A stretch of 64,000 nt of DNA from positions 62,001 through 126,000 of the IMG/VR virus record IMGVR_UViG_3300035698_035366; one strand, written 5' to 3'. Positions 52,432 to 61,127 of the stretch are shown here, piece after piece. The translations under genes were made by a program, and so were the position numbers. The notes beneath the pieces were generated by a model. It searched no databases and had not been told where the DNA came from. It saw nothing but the letters and a program-made list of their open reading frames with translations. Every line of letters starts with the position of its first letter. Position 1 is the first letter of the stretch.

Positions 52432-54462
52432 ATGAGATTAAGCGAATTAAAGAAGATTGAAAAATTACCAAGTTTTACTATTGATCTTGATAATTTCGTC
52501 GAAAATGTAAAAACCAGTATTGATTCAATTAAAGAAACAGTTGATGATATCGCTAATAGTAATGAACCAATAACATGGGAATCATTTGATAAGTTATCAC
52601 TAATAGAAGAAAAATACGGTGATCTCATAGAATTGGCTGCTCACCTAAAAGGCGTTAGGGATGAACCACGTCTCAGAGAAGTTTGGGAAGAGATCATTCC
52701 AATAGCGGATGATTTTGGGAACTGGATGCGCTTCCACCGACGATTTGCTGATAGGCTTACAGAACTACGCGATTCCGGAACGCTAAATGATGAACAACAG
52801 TATATTACGGATGAAGCAGTTAAAAGCTACGAACGTAGCGGATTACTACTTGATGGTGAGCCAAAGAAACGCTTTTCTCAAATATCGTTGCGTTCCAGTG
52901 AACTAGTAAATAATTTCAATAAAAATCTTTTGGATGGAACAAAGGCTTGGTCCTTAAATATAACCGATGAATCGGAATTAGCTGGTGTACCAGAATCCGA
53001 TATGGAAGCCCTAGCTGATATGGCTGAAAGCCGTGGAGAGAAGGGTTGGACAATTACACTTGATTATCCATTATATTCTCCAATTATGGAATATTGCCAA
53101 AATAGGGAACTTCGAAGAATTTGTTCCAAGGCAATGATTACAAAATGCTCAGAATTGGCAGACGATACTAGTTTTGATAACACATCAATTATTAATGAAT
53201 TGATCAAACTTAAAGAAGAATCAGCAAAAATATTAGGGATGAAAACACCAGCCCATTTAAGTGTTGCTAGTAAAATGGTTGAATCACCTGAACAAGTTAT
53301 TGAATTCCTGCGAGATTTAATAGTCAGAACAAAACCACAGGCTGAAAAGGAATTATTCGAGCTCGAAGAGTTCGCCGGGAAAAATGGTCTAGACGGAAAA
53401 ATGCAACCATGGGATAGGGGCTTTTATGCTGAAAAAATGCTACAAAAGAACTTCAAGGTTGATTCAGAAAAGATCCGACAATATTTTATTCTTGATAATG
53501 TTATTGATGGTTTGTTTGGTCTAGTATCACGCCTATATGACATTGAAATCAAAGACGAAACTGATTTAATTGATGATAAATGGGATGACAAGGTTCGATT
53601 CTATCGCCTATACAGAGATGGTGAACATTTTGCTTCGGTATATGCAGACTTTTTTGCTGATTCGAAACGCAAGCGCGGTGGTGCCTGGATGAATGACCCA
53701 GTAACTCGCTGGACCAAACCAGACAAAATTACACAATTACCGGTTGCATATATGGTGATGAATTTCCCATCAGCTACAAAAACTCGTCCAAGTCTTCTAA
53801 CACATAATGACATTGAGACATTGTTCCACGAATTTGGTCACGCCTTGCATCACATGATGACAGAGGTCATCTACAAAGACGCCTCCGGTATACGAGGAGT
53901 TGAATGGGATGCCGTTGAATTACCAAGCCAGCTTATGGAAAACTGGTGCTGGAATGAAGATATTGTACGATCAATGTCATCTCATTGGAAAACTAAAAGA
54001 AAGCTACCAAAGTCACAATTTAAGAATATGCTTGCCGCGAAGAACTTTATGAGTGGTATGGGATTGCTTCGTCAGACAGAAATGGCATTGTTTGATTTCC
54101 TTTTGCATTACGATAGAAAACCAGATGAAACAATTCTTGATGTTCTTACACGTACCCGAGAAGAAACAAAAATATCAGAACCGCTTGAATATGACCGCTT
54201 CCCAAATGGGTTTAGTCATATTTTTGGTGGAGGATACTCGGCGGGATATTTCAGTTATCTTTGGTCTGAGGTTTTAAGTTCTGACACATTCGCCGCCTTT
54301 GAAGAAACTGGTGACGTTTTTAATCCATCAATTGCGGAAAAATTCCGTAAGGAATTATTATCAAAGGGTGGTACAAATAGTATGAGTGAATTATATAGGA
54401 ATTTTAGGGGTCGAGACGTAATATTAGAACCATTCCTTAAAAATCGAGGTATATCCACTTAG
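52432..54462 (+). CDS. prlC: Oligopeptidase A (M3 metallopeptidase)
   Basis: KRGGAWM, LFHEFGHALHH, VEWDAVELPSQLMENW, HIFGGGYSAGYFSY.WSE. Confidence 0.93.
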   Translation: MRLSELKKIEKLPSFTIDLDNFVENVKTSIDSIKETVDDIANSNEPITWESFDKLSLIEEKYGDLIELAAHLKGVRDEPRLREVWEEIIPIADDFGNWMRFHRRFADRLTELRDSGTLNDEQQYITDEAVKSYERSGLLLDGEPKKRFSQISLRSSELVNNFNKNLLDGTKAWSLNITDESELAGVPESDMEALADMAESRGEKGWTITLDYPLYSPIMEYCQNRELRRICSKAMITKCSELADDTSFDNTSIINELIKLKEESAKILGMKTPAHLSVASKMVESPEQVIEFLRDLIVRTKPQAEKELFELEEFAGKNGLDGKMQPWDRGFYAEKMLQKNFKVDSEKIRQYFILDNVIDGLFGLVSRLYDIEIKDETDLIDDKWDDKVRFYRLYRDGEHFASVYADFFADSKRKRGGAWMNDPVTRWTKPDKITQLPVAYMVMNFPSATKTRPSLLTHNDIETLFHEFGHALHHMMTEVIYKDASGIRGVEWDAVELPSQLMENWCWNEDIVRSMSSHWKTKRKLPKSQFKNMLAAKNFMSGMGLLRQTEMALFDFLLHYDRKPDETILDVLTRTREETKISEPLEYDRFPNGFSHIFGGGYSAGYFSYLWSEVLSSDTFAAFEETGDVFNPSIAEKFRKELLSKGGTNSMSELYRNFRGRDVILEPFLKNRGIST

Positions 54463-54561
54463 AGCGCTAATTTCTCCATGTGGGGCTAAATAATTGTAGA
54501 GATATATGTATATATTATGCATATTCTCTTCTATATATAGAATTTACAAGGAGAAATTATT

Positions 54562-55002
54562 ATGGAAAGTACATTAGTTGATTTAAGCCCATTGCTACTA
54601 CAATTGCTTAGTGTTGTGGGTGTGGCTGTCCTAGCCATTGCTGGTTGGGCAGTTAAGAAAGTCGCTGACAAGTTTGGTCTCGAAAACGATGCTAAAATTC
54701 GTGAGTATCTACTTAGTGCAGTTGAACGCGGCGTTGAGTTTGGTAAGCATAAAGCTGAAGAAAAGCTTGGTGATGCCAACTGGGCAAAAATTGATGTTAA
54801 GAACGAATTGGTTGCTAGTGCCGCCGGTTATGTTTTGAAGAAGGTCCCTGATGCATTGAAGAAGTTCAAGCTAACAGAAGATGATGTTAAGGATCTTATT
54901 CTGTCTAAGTTGGGTGCTTCAAACGAAGAAACGGCGGCGACTAAGCCTGCCCAAGCCAGTCCTGTCCCTGTTGCCGCCCCAGTAGCCGAACCTGTAAAGT
55001 AA
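54562..55002 (+). CDS. Holin-like membrane protein
   Basis: Single N-terminal TM, LL-H-like pattern, precedes spanin-like pair. Confidence 0.5.
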   Translation: MESTLVDLSPLLLQLLSVVGVAVLAIAGWAVKKVADKFGLENDAKIREYLLSAVERGVEFGKHKAEEKLGDANWAKIDVKNELVASAAGYVLKKVPDALKKFKLTEDDVKDLILSKLGASNEETAATKPAQASPVPVAAPVAEPVK

Positions 55003-55030
55003 TAATTTAACTTTTAAGGAGGGTGTTACA

Positions 55031-55252
55031 ATGTGGACAACGGTTTTAGGAATATTTGGTAAACTTATCGGTCCAATTATGAAAATGCTGCCATTTTTAG
55101 CAGCGTATAAGGTCGGACAGGGGAAGGCAGAAAAGGATGTTTTAGAAAACAACCTTGAAGCCCGAACCGAAGGTGAGAAAGCTGCAAACGAGGTCAAACA
55201 AGAGGTCCGAGATAAGGGCCTCGCTGACACCGTTCGAAATAGGAAAATTTAA
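55031..55252 (+). CDS. Inner-membrane spanin-like
   Basis: N-terminal hydrophobic segment + coiled coil. Confidence 0.5.
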   Translation: MWTTVLGIFGKLIGPIMKMLPFLAAYKVGQGKAEKDVLENNLEARTEGEKAANEVKQEVRDKGLADTVRNRKI

Positions 55253-55263
55253 GGAGAGTAGAT

Positions 55264-55509
55264 ATGAAAAATGTTATTTTAATCGGCGTTCTACTTACAG
55301 CCACATTAATAGTTAGTGGTTGTGGAACAGATGTCCGTAGTACATCAAGTCTACCTACTTTGCTTGAATATTCCGACCAATTTAGGAATTCTTTTGCTGA
55401 TGAACTTGATGAAATTTGTAAAATAGGTGCTGAAAAAACACCAAAAACTTGCCAATTTATTCAAGATGCAATTGAATTACGTGCCAAAGTTAGAGCGGCA
55501 CAAGAATAA
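55264..55509 (+). CDS. Outer-membrane spanin-like lipoprotein
   Basis: Lipobox VSGC; PTLLEYS..F...ADEL..D...LRAKVRA. Confidence 0.6.
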   Translation: MKNVILIGVLLTATLIVSGCGTDVRSTSSLPTLLEYSDQFRNSFADELDEICKIGAEKTPKTCQFIQDAIELRAKVRAAQE

Positions 55510-55511
55510 TA

Positions 55512-55540
55512 TTGATATCGATATATAATGATGTTAGTAT
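55512..55540 (+). promoter_or_regulatory. Promoter for the non-coding RNA
   Basis: TTGATA-N17-TAGTAT with extended TG. Confidence 0.6.
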
Positions 55541-55550
55541 ATAAAATATA

Positions 55551-55892
55551 AACAGTGGGCAGCAATGTCCTGAACCCATAAACTCTATGTTGGTGACTGG
55601 GATGCCTAGTTCATGGCGTAATGATAGCGGGGGTGACAACCTCGAATATAGAGATCAATGGAATGAACCATTAACTGTTTAAGTGATAACGTAATGTTAT
55701 TACACGGGACATGGAATAGGAATGATAGCGGATGCCCGTACCGCCTTGCAAAGGTCAGCTGCCTTTGTTTGTATAGTTCATACGAGATAATTACTTAGAC
55801 CAATATCAGTCGGGTAATTATCAAGAGACTGGCAATGGATCTTCGATGATCTGTTAAAATTGAAAGCATGATATGCCGGCATTCCTATTCCA
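55551..55892 (+). ncRNA. Unclassified ~340-nt pseudoknotted RNA
   Basis: Stems 55558-63/55758-63, 55565-72/55705-12, 55713-24/55880-91 (12 bp perfect), 55786-94/55814-22; no ORF. Confidence 0.65.
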
Positions 55893-55958
55893 GATCGAAA
55901 AAAGATATTGCAAATATCATTCGCTTATATTATACTACTTAAATAATAAGGAGAAACG

Positions 55959-56114
55959 ATGTTTATTTTTACAATTGCTTGGAGCCAAACAGACCGAGAC
56001 GTTATCGCAGTTGAAGCAAAGACGCGAGACGAAGCTTATGAGAAGATGGTAAAAAGGATTGGAAATAGCTTTAACATCGTTGACACAAGGGAGGTTACAA
56101 AAATAATAGAATAA
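55959..56114 (+). CDS. 51-aa hypothetical
   Basis: RBS TAAGGAG; MFIFTIAWSQTDRDVIAVEAKTRDEAYEKM.. Confidence 0.6.
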   Translation: MFIFTIAWSQTDRDVIAVEAKTRDEAYEKMVKRIGNSFNIVDTREVTKIIE

Positions 56115-56147
56115 TAGAATAATAGAATAATAGAATAATAGAATAAT
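56102..56147 (+). repeat. Tandem 8-mer (AATAATAG) x5.75
   Basis: Direct reading. Confidence 0.95.
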
Positions 56148-56371
56148 TTTTAAAAAACGAACATTTTTTTATTGTTTTAGTACGAAAATTATAGTATATT
56201 ATAAATAACAATGAGGCAGGAGCGTAGGAGCAACAAAAACCTCACATAAATTAAATTATTTAGATCGAAGTCGTAGCTGGAGGTAACGTTACCAGTGAAA
56301 GCGGAAGGGCGGTATACCGCGTCCGATAAGATGAGCCTAAGTCGCAGAACGGAACTGGCACGGATACAGAT

Positions 56372-56438
56372 CGAAGAGCCGAATGCAAACGGTTATCATT
56401 TGGATTGAAACTGTCGTTTGTAAATAACTTGTTCTTCG
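56372..56438 (+). ncRNA. Y-RNA-like unit 1
   Basis: CGAAGAGC[C]GA..GGTTATC..TAACTTGTTCTTCG; 8-bp stem with bulged C. Confidence 0.65.
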
Positions 56439-56444
56439 TAGATC

Positions 56445-56511
56445 GATTGAGCCGAAGGGTAGTTGGTTATCTCTTATTGAAAGAACGTGTTGCAGCACAT
56501 TAACTTGCATC
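56445..56511 (+). ncRNA. Y-RNA-like unit 2
   Basis: GAGC[C]GAAGGGTAGTTGGTTATCTC..TAACTTGC; an alternative pairing with 56511-18 is possible. Confidence 0.6.
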
Positions 56512-57216
56512 CAACCCCAATCCTTGCTCATGATAATTGGTTTCCAATTTCCATAAAAAATTGGTGGTGGAGGCAGCATATAAGGATTAATCCTATTATG
56601 ATACCGCCCCAGGTTTCCAACTTCCTTAAAGAGTTGGTGGCGGATAAAAGTTTTAAGGTAGTGTAATTACCATATGACTCCTCCAAAAGCGGGAAAGAAA
56701 TTTCCCGCTGGATCGAGGCTCTAATAATAACAGGAGCAAGGCGCAGTAGAAAAACCACTCGGTATGTTTATGGGTAAGCTGCATAGACTATAAACGATTA
56801 TACAGATTTGATGCCTGATTCAGCTAAGAAGGCATCTCACGGTGGTGGTGCTGAAACCGCATGATCGTGGGGGTATTCGAGTAAAGCTCGGTACATTTTG
56901 TGGAGGAAGGCTGATTGTGGCACCGACGGAAATCTAGGGTCACCTGTTCTTCAAGGGAGGAGGCACCACAAAGATCGACCTAAATTAGTTTTACTTAGTT
57001 AAACTAAGTTGGGTTGACTTGTTTAGCGATGTATTTGTTGGCTGAAAGCCAATAAAGGTGATTATCCACTGGATAGGTAAGAGGTATACACCTTGGGGCT
57101 ATACATGGCGTTAAATGATGCGTGTAAGGGCGAGCACTGAGTTCAGAGTGCATAGGAAATAAACGGAAGTCGGGAAGCAGTAAGCCTTACGGTAGTCGCT
57201 TCCAAGTCCTAAGATC

Positions 57217-57280
57217 GAAGAGCCGAAGAAATATGGTTATCTTGCAATGATGAACCCCATATTTCATTAACTTGCTCTTT
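57217..57280 (+). ncRNA. Y-RNA-like unit 3
   Basis: GAAGAGC[C]GA..GGTTATC..TAACTTGCTCTTT. Confidence 0.65.
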
Positions 57281-57291
57281 TAATTTTGATC

Positions 57292-57362
57292 GGGGCCGTA
57301 GTATGTGGGTTATCTTACATTCAGAAAACAGTTTCTTGCAGTAAGACCGCTAACACTATCGC
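57292..57362 (+). ncRNA. Y-RNA-like unit 4 (divergent)
   Basis: GGGC[C]GTAGTATGTGGGTTATC; TCTTAC/GTAAGA stem. Confidence 0.5.
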
Positions 57363-57450
57363 AATTACTGATTAGTAATCAATTTATTGGTGAAAATCGG
57401 TTTTCGGATGTTTAATATGGATCACTTAGAATGATTTCAATTAAGTTAAA

Positions 57451-57488
57451 CTAGCCGAAGTCCATGTACACTATTTGCCCTTTGTTAG
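57451..57488 (+). ncRNA. Minimal Y-like bulged-C hairpin
   Basis: CTAGC[C]GAAG pairs with CTTTGTTAG. Confidence 0.4.
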
Positions 57489-58184
57489 CTGGAAGTCATG
57501 ATCCAGCGAAAGACGATAGATGCGGGAATATGGAAGCAAGAGCGTCTTTATTAGAAAGAACTGGCGATATCCAGGGACGTTTGATAGGGATTTTCAAATA
57601 GCCAAAATGGTTATCGAGGAGTCAAATTCCGGTCCGGAATATCTGGAAAGACGTTGATACGATAACTAATCAATTAGCCAGGGCCTACCCGGCGCTTGGT
57701 TTAGAGGGGTTGGTGTAGAACACCTTCCCCTCCTTAATTGAAGTTAATTGAAGATGAATACAGAAGAATAGAACAATTTTTGAAAAACTTGAAAAAAGTT
57801 GTTGCTATTCATAAAAAACAGTGTTAGTATAACGTCTCATATAGTAACTTACAGTAAGAGAGGAATACTAAATGGAAATTTTTAGTAGATAGATTTTATT
57901 TTTAGAGAACTTATTTTTTACTTAGAAAAGTATAGTATGATAGTCGGCCGCGCACCTTGAAATAACCGGCATTTCCTTATTATCCGAAAATGCGTGACAG
58001 GATTTTAAGGGTAGAAAACAAAAATGTTTTTTACTTATGATAGATAAATTTTAATGGGCTTGTATTCTATTAGATAGAAGTTACAAACTCTATAATAGTA
58101 GAACATTAAGGGTAACGGTAGTGGCCACTACCGTTACTCTAGATCGGAGCATAAATTGGAGCATTTAAACAGGAGGGCATAACC

Positions 58185-59819
58185 ATGTCTAGCTTTAACA
58201 GTCTACGTAACACTAATAATTCGCGCCAGAACGCGGCAACCCCACAGTCACAGCCAATTCCAGGCCGTGAAGAGGAGATGGTCGAGAACAACGCAGGTGG
58301 TTTCACCTTCACCGTCGATCTATGGGACCGTCTTGACCGTTTCCTAATCCTTGGAGTTGAGGGTGGAACATACTACGTTTCAGAAAAGAAGCTCGCAGTT
58401 GACAACGCCAAAAACGTTGTTAAGGCAATTGAGCAGGACGGCCTACGGGTTGTTCAGAGAATTGTTGAAATTAGCGACTCTGGCCGAGCAGCAAAGAACG
58501 ATCCAGCATTGTTTGCTCTAGCACTAGCAGCTAGTGCAGATAATCCGCAGACTCGTCAGGCAGCACTTGTGGCTTTGCCACAGGTAGCTCGTATCGGTAC
58601 ACATCTTTTCCACTTTGCGGATTTCGTACAGAATTTCCGTGGTTGGGGCCGCGCACTTCGCCGGGCAATTGGTGATTGGTATACGAAGCAGGATGTCAGT
58701 AATCTAGCCTATCAGGCAGTTAAGTACCGCCAGCGTGATGGTTGGACCCACCGCGACTTACTCCGTTTGAGTCACCCAAAGACTCGCAACGAATCACGTA
58801 ACGATGTTTTCAAGTGGATTGTAACGGGTAAGAACGTTTCCGATGTTCCAGTTATCGCTGGATTTGAACAGGCACAAACGGCAACTTCACCAAAAGAAAT
58901 TGTACGCTTGATTAACGAATTCAATCTTCCACGTGAGGCAATTCCAACAGAGTTCCTTAACGACGTTAATGTATGGGATGCGCTTCTCCAGAAGATGCCT
59001 TTGCACGCAATGATTCGAAACCTTGGTAAGATGAGCAGCATTGGTCTACTTGCACCAATGAGTAATGCCCAGAACCTGGTTGTTAATAAGCTTTCTAACG
59101 CGGAGGATCTCCGTAGAAGCCGTGTACATCCAATGGCTGTTTTGACAGCTTTGTACACGTACAAGAGTGGTCACGGTATCCGTGGTAGCCTTTCTTGGGA
59201 CGTTAACTCTCAGGTGATGGATGCATTGGACGAATCGTTCTATGGAACTTTCCAGAACGTTGAGCCAACTGGTAAGCCAACTATGCTCGCTCTTGATGTT
59301 TCAGGAAGCATGTCAATGGACAACATTGGTGGCGTCCCAGGACTCACACCGCGTGTTGCTAGTGCTGCGATGGCTATGATTACGGCCCGCACTGAGCCAA
59401 ACTATATGGTTACTGCTTTTACCGGTGGTGGAAGCTGGGGACGTAGTGGTAATGTTGATAATTTGACAGTTCTTGATATCACTCCCCGCCAGCGTATGGA
59501 CGATGTAATTCGGAAGGTAAGTGGCCTTTCATTTGGTGGGACGGATTGTGCATTACCAATGATTTATGCCGATAAGAAGAATTTGGCTATTGACAACTTT
59601 GCGGTTTATACTGATAACGAAACATGGGCGGGTTCGATTCAGCCATCCCAGTCTTTGGTAAATTACCGTAAGAAGAGTGGTCGTGGAGCTCGTCTCGCAG
59701 TGGTGGGAATGACGTCAACGGATTTCACTATCGCTGATCCAAAGGATGCTGGTATGATGGACGTGGTTGGATTCGATTCAGCGGCTCCAGCAATTATGGC
59801 CAACTTCTTTCGAGGTTAA
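58185..59819 (+). CDS. rsr: Ro60 RNA-binding protein (TROVE + vWA)
   Basis: NNAGGF, RLDRFLILG.EGGTYY, AVKYRQRDGWTHRDLLRLSHP, MIRNLGKM, LALDVSGSM, GGTDCALP, TDNETW. Confidence 0.96.
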   Translation: MSSFNSLRNTNNSRQNAATPQSQPIPGREEEMVENNAGGFTFTVDLWDRLDRFLILGVEGGTYYVSEKKLAVDNAKNVVKAIEQDGLRVVQRIVEISDSGRAAKNDPALFALALAASADNPQTRQAALVALPQVARIGTHLFHFADFVQNFRGWGRALRRAIGDWYTKQDVSNLAYQAVKYRQRDGWTHRDLLRLSHPKTRNESRNDVFKWIVTGKNVSDVPVIAGFEQAQTATSPKEIVRLINEFNLPREAIPTEFLNDVNVWDALLQKMPLHAMIRNLGKMSSIGLLAPMSNAQNLVVNKLSNAEDLRRSRVHPMAVLTALYTYKSGHGIRGSLSWDVNSQVMDALDESFYGTFQNVEPTGKPTMLALDVSGSMSMDNIGGVPGLTPRVASAAMAMITARTEPNYMVTAFTGGGSWGRSGNVDNLTVLDITPRQRMDDVIRKVSGLSFGGTDCALPMIYADKKNLAIDNFAVYTDNETWAGSIQPSQSLVNYRKKSGRGARLAVVGMTSTDFTIADPKDAGMMDVVGFDSAAPAIMANFFRG

Positions 59820-59828
59820 CTAAATACG

Positions 59829-59853
59829 GGGGATGGCTTGGCCATCCCCTTTA
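59829..59853 (+). terminator. Terminator after Ro60
   Basis: GGGGATGGC-TTG-GCCATCCCC-TTTA. Confidence 0.75.
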
Positions 59854-59894
59854 TTGCTTGACAAACGGAAATATACGTCTACTTAGTAGATGGT

Positions 59895-60053
59895 ATCAAG
59901 CAATTGATCGACCACCCCTGCTCCTGTTAATTGGGGTGACTCGGCGGCATTTTTTAATATTGCCGTATTACGAAAAGTGATCAACACGATCACATTTTCC
60001 GCTCCTCCTGTAGAACGGGCCGCGCAATGAACGCGTCGGCCCGTTCTTTCTTT
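59895..60053 (+). ncRNA. Candidate sRNA with CU-rich anti-SD motifs
   Basis: TTGACA at 59858, three hairpins, 11-bp terminator stem 60012-22/60037-47. Confidence 0.45.
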
Positions 60054-60116
60054 ATAAAGTTGACAATACACCAAATCGTGCTATAATACGGTATATCGAA
60101 AATAAGGAGATCGAAA

Positions 60117-61127
60117 ATGCCAAAGGCTATTGTGCTAATTCATCGAGAAGAAGTCGGGTTTCCTGGCGAAATGTTCAACCGTGATACTGTCATTGGTGTC
60201 ATGACACAAAACACCAACGAGACCGAGGTTGAATTTGATTCTCGAGTAAATGAAGTTCAAACTCGATTGAAGAACACCACAATTCTTGATCAGCTCGCAA
60301 AGTCACCTGAATTTAAAGGCATCGCCGCCCCATTCCTCGGTGATAAGCATTATGAGGGATTGATTATCGTTGAAGGAACCGAAATACTGTAATTTCTGGA
60401 GAATAGAATGAATCATATGAAATATGTGGTAATTGATAATGGTATGTATGAACAGATTTTTATTTTCTGTGATGCAATACCGCATGATTCGATGGTTGCT
60501 AAAATTGGACAATCGACTAAAAATGTCGTTTCGGCTGGTTTTGTAACATATGGAAGTGACGGTAATTTGTCGTGTTACGGTCATTCGACCAGCTTGAACT
60601 TAAAAAGTCGTCTTATCGAAGATACCGATCTATTGAATCTAGAACTTCGAGGACGAAACCCATACTAAGGAAAAAGAATGCCTAGTATTTTTGATATTGT
60701 ACCAAATGAAAGTTTCCAAGAAGAACAAAAGAAGGCAAAGGAAATTGTCTTACGTTCTCTTCTTATCAAGAGTCGTGATATTGACGGATTCAGGAACAAT
60801 TCAACTTTGATATCTGAATTTTCTTTGTCTAACCTAGATCTATTGACATATACGGCGGTTTTCTATATAAAACCAGGCGAGTCGAATGTGAAAGAATTTA
60901 AGGAATCTGTGTCTGAGTGGGTTGCAGATTCAGCCATTGAAGGAAATTTTATTGGCTTTTTCCGAGTTAATGGTACCGGAAAAAAGAAAGAATTCGAAAC
61001 AACCAACAAAAATAAACGAAAATATACGCATCGTGCCATTGCCGTAAATGTATCATTTACGCATAAAGGAGATTATGACCTCTTCGAGAATGAATTTATG
61101 GTATTAAGTAAGCTTACTGATACATAA
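60117..61127 (+). CDS. Three hypotheticals (60117-60392, 60408-60668, 60678-61127)
   Basis: RBS-bearing ORFs after an early promoter. Confidence 0.6.

What the first reader, a model, noticed from the sequence alone, without database searches (positions are those of the whole stretch)
55893..58146. Strand-specific GATCG punctuation of the non-coding region
GATCG occurs at 55893, 56263, 56369, 56441, 56711, 56863, 56973, 57213, 57288 and 58142 (also 59906). A rough estimate from base composition is 1-2 per strand, and I saw no CGATC in the span. Most copies directly follow a stem or precede a Y-like unit. Inference: a processing signal cutting a polycistronic precursor into separate RNAs.
Basis: partly seen in the sequence, partly recalled or inferred. 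Interest (0 to 1): 0.72.

Follow-up and report, generated by a model that had tools for sequence, protein, structure and literature searches.

The report
Boundary motif in phage Y-RNA array
A sharply defined 7-letter word (A-GATCG-A/G), always on the transcribed strand, marks where each small non-coding RNA and the Ro60 messenger begin in this giant phage and its distant relatives; it most likely tells a nuclease where to cut a long precursor, but no RNA data exist to prove that.

Summary
All ten + strand GATCG copies (plus 59906) are present and there is no minus-strand copy between 53968 and 58316. About 1.6-2.1 copies are expected; genome-wide scan p is about 0.001.

The window comes from a 296-kb jumbo phage (salt-lake metagenome). 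The span is a non-coding RNA array upstream of a phage Ro60 (Rsr) gene. It holds four Y-RNA-like units, a wcaG RNA and several unclassified units.

The real motif is (U)A-GAUCG-R. In about 15 related phages (Ro60 about 60% identical, 46-55% GC), whose RNA units show almost no detectable sequence similarity to the window's, the same heptamer is the most frequent recurrent 7-mer in the non-coding DNA upstream of Ro60. Counts there are 38 on the + strand against 11.3 expected and 9 on the minus strand. One-mismatch variants are mostly not enriched. The motif always opens the Ro60 5' leader.

Best reading: a sequence-specific RNA boundary or processing signal (confidence 0.5). Rivals are a 5' tag bound by a protein, a DNA cassette junction and a start-site element. 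The nuclease is unknown. No RNA ends could be mapped.

The parts
55535..55540 (+). Predicted -10 element (TAGTAT) of promoter P1; the -35/-10 pair is 55512-55540. It drives the first large non-coding RNA.
   Evidence: Consensus scan. One of four paralogous TAGTAT promoter copies. Inference only.
55547..55892 (+). Large unclassified non-coding RNA ('unit A'). It shares the words GAACCCAUA and GGUGACUGGG with the first RNA of the relatives' arrays, and its 3' border is the GATCG at 55893.
   Evidence: Weak blastn match to L112; shared conserved 7-mers; no Rfam family.
55893..55897 (+). GATCG copy 1 (context ccAGATCGAaaaaa). It is a pure 3' border of unit A and lies upstream of the next promoter.
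56192..56197 (+). Predicted -10 (TAGTAT) of promoter P2, with a start site near 56204. It is the likely start of the polycistronic array.
   Evidence: Paralogy with P1 (families D7 and D10). Inference only.
56263..56368 (+). GATCG copy 2 and the 106-nt unclassified unit that follows it.
56369..56440 (+). GATCG copy 3 and Y-like RNA 1. The 5' strand CGAAGAGC-C-GA pairs with the 3' strand UUGUUCUUCG; it also carries the GGUUAUC box.
   Evidence: The GCCGAAU word partly matches the GNCGAA(N0-1)G motif named in PMC4201824. Paralog of 57213 (D5).
56441..56530 (+). GATCG copy 4 and Y-like RNA 2 (UUGAGC-C-GAAGG ... CCUUGCUCA).
56536..56651 (+). wcaG RNA (Rfam RF01761). No GATCG separates it from Y-like RNA 2.
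   Evidence: 56.2 bits against a gathering score of 42, E = 1e-8.
56711..56862 (+). GATCG copy 5 and a 152-nt unclassified unit. It is preceded by a strong hairpin at 56689-56709.
   Evidence: hairpin z-score -4.4.
56863..56972 (+). GATCG copy 6 and a 110-nt unclassified unit closed by GUGG/CCAC.
56973..57212 (+). GATCG copy 7 and a 240-nt unclassified unit.
57213..57287 (+). GATCG copy 8 and Y-like RNA 3 (GAAGAGC-C-GA ... UUGCUCUU).
   Evidence: (fold z-score -4.1).
57288..57365 (+). GATCG copy 9 and Y-like RNA 4, a divergent copy (GGGGCCGUAGUAUGUGGGUUAUC).
   Evidence: D9.
57932..57937 (+). Predicted -10 (TAGTAT) of promoter P4, with a start site near 57944. It drives a roughly 200-nt RNA followed by the Ro60 mRNA.
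   Evidence: D10. Inference only.
58112..58137 (+). Hairpin ending 4 nt before GATCG copy 10. The stem is rewritten by compensatory changes in a 92%-identical relative.
   Evidence: z-score -4.3; alignment with L105.
58142..58184 (+). GATCG copy 10 and the 43-nt Ro60 5' leader, which is 100% identical in L105 from the G of GATCG onward.
   Evidence: In all 13 aligned clade members GATCG opens this leader.
58185..59819 (+). Ro60 / Rsr gene (TROVE plus vWA domains, 544 aa).
   Evidence: Pfam PF05731 (2e-46) and PF25045 (2e-57); thousands of homologs.
59906..60052 (+). GATCG copy 11 and a roughly 145-nt small RNA ending in a terminator. It is about 97% conserved in L105, whereas the promoter-to-GATCG leader carries an 18-nt indel.
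60108..60119 (+). AGATCGA between the Shine-Dalgarno sequence and the start codon (GGAGAUCGAAAAUG). This is a second, recurrent context of the same word.

Best explanation
The word (U)A-GAUCG-R, read in the RNA, is a sequence-specific boundary signal for the non-coding RNA array and the Ro60 messenger of a clade of jumbo phages.

Proposed transcription. The array appears to be made as a few long transcripts: P2, near 56204, runs to about 57700, and P4, near 57944, runs through Ro60. A sequence-specific endoribonuclease, phage- or host-encoded and not yet identified, is proposed to cut in or just beside the word.

Proposed products. Cutting would release each unit (Y-like RNAs, unclassified RNAs, the Ro60 mRNA leader) with a defined 5' end at about G5/A6 of the motif. 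The upstream unit would keep a short 3' tail that can be trimmed back to its terminal structure.

What is shown: the local enrichment, the strand specificity, the sharpness of the motif, its conservation at borders across distant relatives, and its position relative to Y-RNA stems and predicted start sites.

What is inferred: that the array is polycistronic, that the RNA is cut, and where it is cut.
For: (1) Local excess on one strand only: 10 found against about 2 expected and 0 on the other strand.

(2) Independent replication. In 12 other clade members there are 38 + strand copies in non-coding DNA upstream of Ro60, against 11.3 +/- 3.4 expected and 9 on the minus strand. An unbiased 7-mer count ranks AGATCGA highest in total copies among recurrent words (21 on the + strand, 1 on the minus), alongside the Y-RNA core words.

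(3) Sharp motif. The exact heptamer occurs 29 times on the + strand and once on the minus. One-mismatch variants are mostly not enriched. The logo is U-2 A-1 GAUCG R+5.

(4) The flanking units show almost no detectable sequence similarity between the window and its relatives (one weak 42-nt blastn hit), yet the punctuation is kept. In L112 six consecutive borders carry it.

(5) It marks borders of every kind. Examples are a pure 3' border (55893; L121 3521), RNA-to-RNA borders, RNA-to-mRNA borders (58142; L197 3353; L121 3849), and the start of the Ro60 leader in 13 of 13 aligned relatives.

(6) Comparison with the 92% relative L105. Conservation starts at GATCG (58142), while the hairpin just upstream changes by compensatory substitutions. 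At 59906 the leader upstream of GATCG has an 18-nt indel and the RNA downstream is about 97% identical.

(7) Y RNAs that have their own promoter directly upstream lack the motif (L127, L197). Their predicted start corresponds to motif position 5-6 in the others.

(8) No convincing promoter lies between 56263 and 57700. The motif heptamer is somewhat more accessible than background in local folding (median 0.06 against 0.019, p = 2.5e-4).
Against: No RNA evidence. No RNA run is listed and the DNA contigs were uninformative.

No candidate nuclease. RtcB, RNase III and RegB are absent from the 296-kb record, which is estimated 79% complete.

Promoter-proximal copies. In seven relatives a sigma-70-like -35 box sits 30-33 nt upstream of the leader's GATCG, and in three cases 25 nt upstream. 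The primary transcript would then already start within about 4 nt of the motif, or inside it, where a cut seems unnecessary.

Incomplete punctuation. Not every unit border has the motif: it is missing between Y-like RNA 2 and wcaG, and in 57365-57700.

Other points. The same word recurs between the Shine-Dalgarno sequence and AUG of at least five genes; that context was not tested. A 7-nt specificity is unlike the degenerate sites of RNase E or RNase Y. Absolute predicted accessibility is low, because GAUC copies can pair with each other.
Confidence: 0.5

Rival explanations
1. The motif is a 5'-terminal recognition tag, not a cut site. On this reading GAUCGR is the first sequence of each mature RNA and is bound by a protein. 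Candidates are the conserved 90-100-aa protein encoded just upstream of the Ro60 leader, or an assembly factor of the Ro60 particle. Binding would stabilise, sort or load the RNAs.
For: Predicted start sites fall 1-4 nt upstream of the motif in seven relatives' Ro60 leaders. The motif is invariant while its 3' pairing partner varies (CGA, CGG, UGG; read from the sequences). A small orphan protein (RWNNRxPGNGRFEGxGxIR) co-occurs with the motif in every clade member that has enough upstream sequence, and in no other Ro60 phage locus. Its homolog in this genome is followed 14 nt later by AGATCGA.
Against: Copies that are only 3' borders (55893, followed by a promoter; L121 3521) have no downstream RNA to tag. 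Internal copies in a promoter-less array still need a cut to become 5' ends. The co-occurrence with the small protein is a single phylogenetic event. The protein has no recognised fold or family: Foldseek found nothing with E <= 0.001, the best VIA Z-score was 5.6, and Pfam, PHROGs and the solved-structure sequence search gave no match.
Confidence: 0.2
2. The motif is a DNA-level junction. On this reading GATCG is the core site, or scar, of a recombination or insertion mechanism that shuffles non-coding RNA cassettes, by analogy with integron core sites or the short strand-specific target words of IS200/IS605-type elements.
For: Unit content differs greatly between relatives, and homology breaks fall at the motif. 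Examples are L120, L121 and L125 between unit A and the Y RNA, and L105 against the window at 58142. The number of units varies from 2 to about 10. The motif is sharp, like a DNA recognition site.
Against: No recombinase or transposase lies next to the arrays. The only nuclease-like gene nearby is a TnsA-like protein in the structural module of all relatives. The motif also opens the Ro60 leader at a fixed place in 13 of 13 relatives, with no sign of cassette exchange there. It tracks the transcribed strand and non-coding or 5' UTR positions. The units have no conserved terminal hairpins or inverted repeats.
Confidence: 0.1
3. The motif is a transcription start element (initiator or discriminator) for a phage-modified or phage-encoded RNA polymerase, so that each unit is its own transcript.
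For: The distance from -35 boxes to GATCG clusters at 25 and at 30-33 nt (10 of 73 next-copy distances fall at 23-35 nt; a uniform spread would give about 2). The motif sits at the 5' border of the units.
Against: Nothing is conserved upstream of the internal copies beyond U-2 A-1 and a C-rich, G-poor tract. Most internal copies have no -35 or -10 match. The clustered promoter cases are largely orthologous copies of one promoter embedded in the end of the small ORF. The copies at 55893 and L121 3521 are followed by a separate promoter.
Confidence: 0.08
4. The pattern is chance or shared ancestry: the copies are carried along by tandem duplication of Y-like units and have no function of their own.
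For: Units 56369 and 57213 are paralogs that share AGATCGAAGAGCCGAA (D5). Units 56441 and genome 260656 are similar.
Against: At least six window copies precede sequences that are not related to one another. The excess is replicated in relatives whose units show almost no sequence similarity to the window's. The motif is invariant where the flanks have diverged to 46-55% GC.
Confidence: 0.03

Closest known systems
Bacterial and phage Ro60 (Rsr) loci with adjacent Y RNAs (YrlA/YrlB; Thermus phage phiLo Yrl1/Yrl2)
   Same: A Ro60 gene is preceded on the same strand by RNAs that carry the GNCGAA(N0-1)G word in a bulged stem (PMC4201824; PMC12135203). Here the words are GAGCCGAAG, GGUUAUC and CUUGCUC. 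One relative's unit scores 37.9 bits on the nematode stem-bulge (Y homolog) family.
   Different: The array holds up to about ten units, most of which are not Y-like, and it includes a wcaG RNA. The short units have no tRNA-like domain (ARAGORN found none). A conserved heptamer punctuates the units; the passages I read in those papers do not mention such a signal. The window's units have no Rfam Y_RNA hit.
ToxI/ToxN-type (type III toxin-antitoxin) precursor processing (from my own knowledge)
   Same: A tandem non-coding RNA precursor is cut at one short defined sequence by a dedicated sequence-specific endoribonuclease encoded next to it.
   Different: ToxI units are identical repeats, whereas these units are heterogeneous. 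No ToxN-like gene was looked for or found. The small adjacent protein has no recognised fold.
CRISPR pre-crRNA processing by Cas6 (from my own knowledge)
   Same: A long transcript is cut at a repeated signal between variable units, strand-specifically.
   Different: The signal here is 7 nt with no repeat hairpin. There are no cas genes, and unit lengths vary from 72 to 356 nt.
Phage T4 RegB endoribonuclease (GGAG sites) and processing of the T4 tRNA / small-RNA cluster (from my own knowledge)
   Same: A phage-directed, sequence-specific RNA cut, some of it in translation initiation regions. The word also recurs as GGAGAUCGAAAAUG.
   Different: No RegB homolog was found (although the control genomes also gave no match). 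The motif is different. The tRNA cluster of this phage is not punctuated by it.
RNase E (RN|WUU) or RNase Y (cut after G) sites (from my own knowledge)
   Same: AG|AUC loosely fits R-N-cut-W-U, with the key U at +2 and a G at -1. The site lies in a linker between helices.
   Different: Those enzymes accept degenerate sites. Here C+3, G+4 and R+5 are invariant and single mismatches are mostly not enriched.

Membership tests
Y RNA (bacterial YrlA-like / metazoan Y / nematode sbRNA) | Encoded next to, and on the same strand as, a Ro60 gene | tested here: met
   Four units lie 0.8-1.8 kb upstream of the Ro60 gene at 58185-59819 on the + strand.
Y RNA (bacterial YrlA-like / metazoan Y / nematode sbRNA) | GNCGAA(N0-1)G word in the 5' strand of a terminal stem with a bulged C, paired to a YUUGNC 3' strand | tested here: met
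   GAGCCGAAG / CUUGCUC in units 56441 and 57213 and at genome 260656. Unit 56369 has GAGCCGAAU, a partial match. Lower-stem sequences differ between units yet stay paired: AGAGC/GUUCU, UGAGC/GCUCA, and ACGGGC/GCCCGU in L112. The motif definition comes from PMC4201824. Unit 57288 is divergent (GCCGUAG).
Y RNA (bacterial YrlA-like / metazoan Y / nematode sbRNA) | Match to a curated covariance model | tested here: not met
   No Y_RNA or sbRNA hit with E <= 1 in window 54000-61000. A relative's unit (L112 3830-3918) reaches 37.9 bits against a gathering score of 38 for RF01656.
Y RNA (bacterial YrlA-like / metazoan Y / nematode sbRNA) | tRNA-like domain (YrlA subfamily) | tested here: not met
   ARAGORN finds nothing in the window. 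The 72-90-nt units have no room for D and T arms.
Y RNA (bacterial YrlA-like / metazoan Y / nematode sbRNA) | Binds Ro60 | not testable with these tools
   The complex prediction was not folded for a protein-RNA pair, so it counts neither for nor against.
wcaG RNA (RF01761) | Score above Rfam's gathering threshold over the full model | tested here: met
   56536-56651 on the + strand, 56.2 bits against 42, model positions 1-98 of 98.
Endonucleolytic processing signal of a polycistronic RNA | Recurrent strand-specific signal at unit borders, conserved when the units are not | tested here: met
Endonucleolytic processing signal of a polycistronic RNA | RNA 5' and 3' ends map to the signal | not testable with these tools
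   No RNA run is listed. The single read-laying run returned only DNA contigs.
Endonucleolytic processing signal of a polycistronic RNA | A cognate nuclease is identified | tested here: not met
   RtcB, RNase III and RegB are absent from the phage record. The adjacent small protein has no nuclease-like match.
RNase E-type site | Degenerate single-stranded R-N-cut-W-U-U site | tested here: inconclusive
   AG/AUC fits four of the five positions, but the motif is far sharper than such sites. Predicted accessibility is only modestly raised.
Self-cleaving ribozyme | Match to a known ribozyme family flanking the cut site | tested here: not met
   No ribozyme family with E <= 1 in the window or in five relatives. 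The flanks are not conserved.
Sigma-70 promoter at each copy | -35 and -10 hexamers at the proper distance upstream of each copy | tested here: not met
   The consensus scan lists nothing suitably placed upstream of the internal window copies. Such promoters occur only at some relatives' Y RNA and leader copies.

The most novel reading that the evidence does not exclude
The heptamer is the recognition site of a dedicated, phage-encoded, sequence-specific RNA-binding or RNA-cutting protein. The candidate is the orphan 90-100-aa RWNNRxPGNGRFEG protein that sits immediately upstream of the GAUCG-initiated Ro60 leader in every clade member. Together with Ro60, the Y-like RNAs and a Y-mimic hairpin in the Ro60 leader, it would form a self-contained, autoregulated particle-biogenesis module that jumbo phages carry into their hosts.
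Probability: 0.12. Interest if true: 0.85.

Novelty: new variant of a known kind. Interest (0 to 1): 0.66.

Why it matters
Ro60 and Y RNAs are an old puzzle: an autoantigen in people, an RNA quality-control factor in bacteria, and now a recurring cargo of phages. Here a clade of jumbo phages carries arrays of up to about ten small RNAs beside Ro60, delimited by one invariant heptamer. If this is a cut site, it defines the mature ends of a whole set of unstudied phage RNAs. It also points to an unknown enzyme with 7-nt specificity, which could serve as a tool. Finally, it gives a simple handle, mutating one word, for asking what phage Ro60 particles do during infection. The motif could also be used to help find and delimit such arrays in metagenomes.

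Tried and rejected
- Exact 15-mer search (GATCGAAGAGCCGAA) in viral contigs gave 104 hits at about chance level, none Y-like.
- blastn of the array against the phage collection found no match.
- The single Ro60 protein against viral contigs found nothing; an alignment of Ro60 proteins was needed.
- Reads were laid from four salt-lake runs in the hope of natural variants. Only identical low-coverage DNA contigs came back.
- The metagenome scan with the Y-RNA core word gave only two loci, both from one further clade member.
- RtcB, RNase III and RegB were searched in the phage's own genome and are absent; for RegB the control genomes also gave no match.
- A link to the tRNA cluster was considered and rejected: only one of 34 tRNAs has a GATCG nearby.
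- The stem-before-motif idea does not exceed background.
- An automatic consensus fold of the six Y-like units failed because the 3' halves aligned badly. The stems were read by eye and from single folds instead.
- The Ro60 plus Y-like RNA complex prediction was not folded.
- The small protein was searched against Pfam, PHROGs, solved-structure sequences, Foldseek on PDB and AlphaFold DB, VIA-align and the Atlas. There was no significant match. The best were ribosome hibernation factor-like alpha/beta folds at Z 5-5.6, below the level at which such matches mean anything.
- A literature search for GAUCG with 'endoribonuclease' gave only incidental sequence strings.
- Readings considered by inspection of the sequences and set aside: hammerhead triplet, K-turn, T-loop, RNase P substrate, Dam/SeqA cluster, pairing with the 16S 3' end. 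None fits the flanks.
Full report
**What the region is**

The window is bases 62001-126000 of a single 296,119-bp viral record (38% GC) with 34 tRNA genes on the + strand. It is a jumbo phage. Public runs that hold it are salt-lake metagenomes.

The ORF at 58185-59819 is a Ro60/Rsr protein with TROVE and Ro60-vWA domains. The 2.6 kb upstream has no convincing ORF. It contains:
- a wcaG RNA at 56536-56651 (56 bits);
- four short units at 56369, 56441, 57213 and 57288 that carry the Y-RNA signature. This is a GAGCCGAAG-type word, defined as GNCGAA(N0-1)G in PMC4201824, in a bulged stem that pairs with CUUGCUC, followed by GGUUAUC;
- a fifth Y-like unit elsewhere in the genome, at 260656.

Phage Ro60 genes with upstream Y-like RNAs are already known (PMC4201824; PMC12135203).

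**Check of the observation**

There is no minus-strand copy between 53968 and 58316. The expected number is 1.6 from the genome rate and 2.1 from dinucleotide shuffles.

After correcting for having scanned the whole genome:
- the 10 copies in 2254 nt are reached in 22 of 5000 random placements;
- 9 copies in 1.4 kb are reached in 5 of 5000;
- the extended word AGATCGR is reached in 2 of 5000.

**Replication in relatives**

This is the decisive evidence. Homologs of the Ro60 protein led to related phage contigs with the same gene order: sheath, non-coding gap, Ro60, tube protein, a TnsA-like protein, terminase. The clade whose Ro60 is at least about 55% identical comprises the window, L105, L110-L127, L197 and L199. 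Its members have 46-55% GC, and blastn finds almost no similarity between their RNA units and the window's, only one weak 42-nt hit.

The same word nevertheless sits at their unit borders:
- L112 has seven + strand copies and no minus-strand copy, delimiting six consecutive units.
- Over 12 non-window loci there are 38 + strand copies, against 11.3 +/- 3.4 expected and 9 on the minus strand.
- In an unbiased count of all 7-mers in 13.6 kb of non-coding DNA from 16 non-redundant loci, AGATCGA has the highest total count among recurrent words (21 on the + strand, 1 on the minus). It ranks with the Y-RNA core words GAGCCGA, CUUGCUC and GGUUAUC.
- One-mismatch variants are mostly not enriched, so recognition is sharp.
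- Other Ro60 phage clades have tandem Y-like RNAs (eight in L177) without this word. There the units are preceded by AT-rich, promoter-like DNA.

**Where the motif sits**

1. It lies directly 5' of Y-like stems. C4 and G5 of the motif are usually the first paired bases, while the 3' partner varies (CGA, CGG, UGG) and the motif does not (sequences).
2. It lies at borders between unrelated units.
3. It can be a pure 3' border. At 55893 it is followed by an A-run and a separate promoter. At L121 3521 it is followed by a promoter.
4. It lies between a non-coding RNA and an mRNA (58142; L197 3353; L121 3849).
5. It opens the Ro60 5' leader in all 13 aligned relatives.

Comparison with L105 (Ro60 92% identical) is telling. 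The hairpin before 58142 has a completely rewritten but still paired stem. A 2-nt linker follows, and from GATCG onward the leader is identical. At 59906 the stretch between promoter and GATCG carries an 18-nt indel, whereas the roughly 145 nt after GATCG are about 97% identical up to a terminator. In both cases conservation starts at the motif.

**Transcription units (inference)**

Four paralogous promoter copies with a TAGTAT -10 element lie at 55535, 56192, 57825 and 57932. The consensus scan lists no -35/-10 pair suitably placed upstream of the GATCG copies between 56263 and 57700.

The simplest model is therefore:
- P2 drives one transcript with eight internal GAUCG copies.
- P4 drives a roughly 200-nt RNA, then GAUCG, then the Ro60 mRNA.

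**Promoter-proximal copies**

In relatives, -35 boxes (TTGACN) lie at two preferred distances from GATCG.
- At 25 nt (three cases), the predicted start falls on G5 of the motif.
- At 30-33 nt (seven Ro60 leaders), the predicted start falls 1-4 nt upstream of the motif.

Y RNAs with a promoter directly upstream and no motif (L127, L197) are predicted to start at the position that corresponds to motif base 5-6.

Two readings are possible:
- The mature 5' end is about G5/A6. It is made either by initiation or by a cut after GAUC, and the motif is kept at promoters because read-through transcripts also need cutting.
- The motif is a 5'-terminal tag.

Neither can be settled without RNA data.

**Negative or weak results**

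- The heptamer is only modestly more accessible than background.
- No RNA run is listed, and the read-laying run returned identical DNA contigs.
- RtcB, RNase III and RegB are not encoded in the record.
- No ribozyme family matches.
- The tRNA cluster is not punctuated by the word.

**A candidate partner (a lead only)**

Every clade member encodes a 90-100-aa orphan protein with the invariant block RW.NR..GNGRF.G.G.IR immediately upstream of the Ro60 leader. Its last codons contain the leader promoter's -35 box. In most members GATCG follows its stop codon within 2-110 nt; in L126 the gap is about 170 nt.

In this genome the homolog lies elsewhere, at 270324-270587, abutting a tRNA-Arg gene. 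It too is followed 14 nt later by AGATCGA.

It is absent from the other 60-odd Ro60 phage loci. That contrast amounts to one phylogenetic event, not independent support.

The AlphaFold model (pLDDT 79) has a helix, three strands and a helix. It has no significant structural or family match.

**Verdict**

The interpretation as a processing signal is the best-supported mechanism, but it is unproven (confidence 0.5).

The Ro60/Y-RNA setting is known. The invariant heptamer punctuation of a heterogeneous RNA array, conserved across a phage clade, is new as far as I could find. I file it as a new variant of a known kind: a signal-directed cut of polycistronic non-coding RNA.

Noticed in passing
L113:3402-3486, L118:4871-4955, L120:4874-4955 and ten other relatives (alignment A6); absent from window 58142-58184: In relatives the Ro60 5' leader ends in a hairpin, CUUGCUC-loop-GAGCCGAA, immediately before the Shine-Dalgarno sequence. 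This hairpin re-creates the Ro60-binding bulged helix of Y RNAs, which suggests that Ro60 controls its own translation. The stem top covaries (GUG/CAC, GUA/UAC, AGA/UCU). A first hairpin in the same leader shows compensatory changes in 5 of 11 pairs. The window's own leader lacks the mimic.
   Followed up: partly
L120:4471-4770, L112:5585-5854; own genome 270324-270587 (L194:1492-1755): An orphan 90-100-aa protein family (RWNNRxPGNGRFEGxGxIR; 452 homologs, none named, no Pfam family) lies just upstream of the Ro60 leader in every phage of the GATCG clade. The copy in this genome abuts tRNA-Arg(ccg) and is followed by AGATCGA.
   Followed up: partly
window 56536-56651 (+): A full-length wcaG RNA (RF01761), a motif I recall from marine metagenomes and cyanophages, sits inside a Ro60-associated RNA array of a salt-lake jumbo phage. 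Its two halves are internal repeats (56539-56571 and 56612-56644).
   Followed up: no
window 55547-55892 (+); L112:2949-3304, L120:3640-3963, L113:2620-2881: A large (about 330-480 nt) unclassified RNA opens the array in the window and its relatives. Its conserved blocks are GAACCCAUA, GGUGACUGGG and, in relatives only, GUGUGCUGACACAUAAAGGUAUC. It has no Rfam match.
   Followed up: partly
window 59906-60052 (+): A small RNA downstream of Ro60 starts at GATCG and ends at a terminator whose stem covaries in L105. It is about 97% conserved in a relative that is 82% identical overall, and it contains a CCGCUCCUCCUGU tract that resembles an anti-Shine-Dalgarno sequence.
   Followed up: partly
window 60104-60119; genome 104849, 254325, 276262, 286215: GGAG followed by ATCGA and then AUG is the commonest spacer after GGAG in this genome (5 of 144). 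Three further starts read GA(A/G)GAUCGAUG. The boundary word therefore also recurs in translation initiation regions.
   Followed up: partly
window 56102-56147: A perfect 8-nt tandem repeat (AATAATAG, about 5.75 copies) overlaps the stop of the 51-aa ORF. Two independent assemblies of the same phage break at exactly this place (L107 and L109 both start at window 56118).
   Followed up: no
own genome 260656-260750 (L198:97-190), outside the window: A fifth Y-like RNA (GAUCGAUGAGCCGAAGG...CUCCUUGCUCA) lies in the tRNA region. It is preceded by a hairpin, then UUA, then GAUCG.
   Followed up: partly
own genome 266810-266850 and 267007-267047, outside the window: Two paralogous elements about 200 nt apart place AAAGAUCGUAA between the complementary arms GAGC and GCUC (read by eye). 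This is a different presentation of the same core word.
   Followed up: no
window 55512-55541, 56175-56219, 57802-57831, 57916-57938: Four paralogous promoter-like copies share a TAGTAT -10 element. P1 and P2 also share the first transcribed bases (ACAGUGGGCAG and ACAAUGAGGCAG).
   Followed up: no
L177:4100-4860; L157:3437-3790; L151:4488-4915: Other phage clades carry tandem arrays of up to eight short Y-like RNAs (GAGCCGAAU...GGUUAUC) upstream of Ro60. Each unit is preceded by AT-rich, promoter-like DNA instead of GATCG.
   Followed up: partly
L113:3393-3409; L120:3945-3968: The tract just upstream of some GAUCG copies reads CACCUCCUUA or CCUCCUUAACUACCUU, which resembles the 3' end of 16S rRNA (the anti-Shine-Dalgarno sequence). 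More generally, the 13 nt upstream of the motif are C-rich and G-poor.
   Followed up: no
window 52432-54462 (+): A full-length M3-family oligopeptidase (Peptidase_M3, E = 8e-125) is encoded by the phage, followed by a possible lysis cassette that includes an 81-aa lipoprotein-like ORF at 55264-55509.
   Followed up: no
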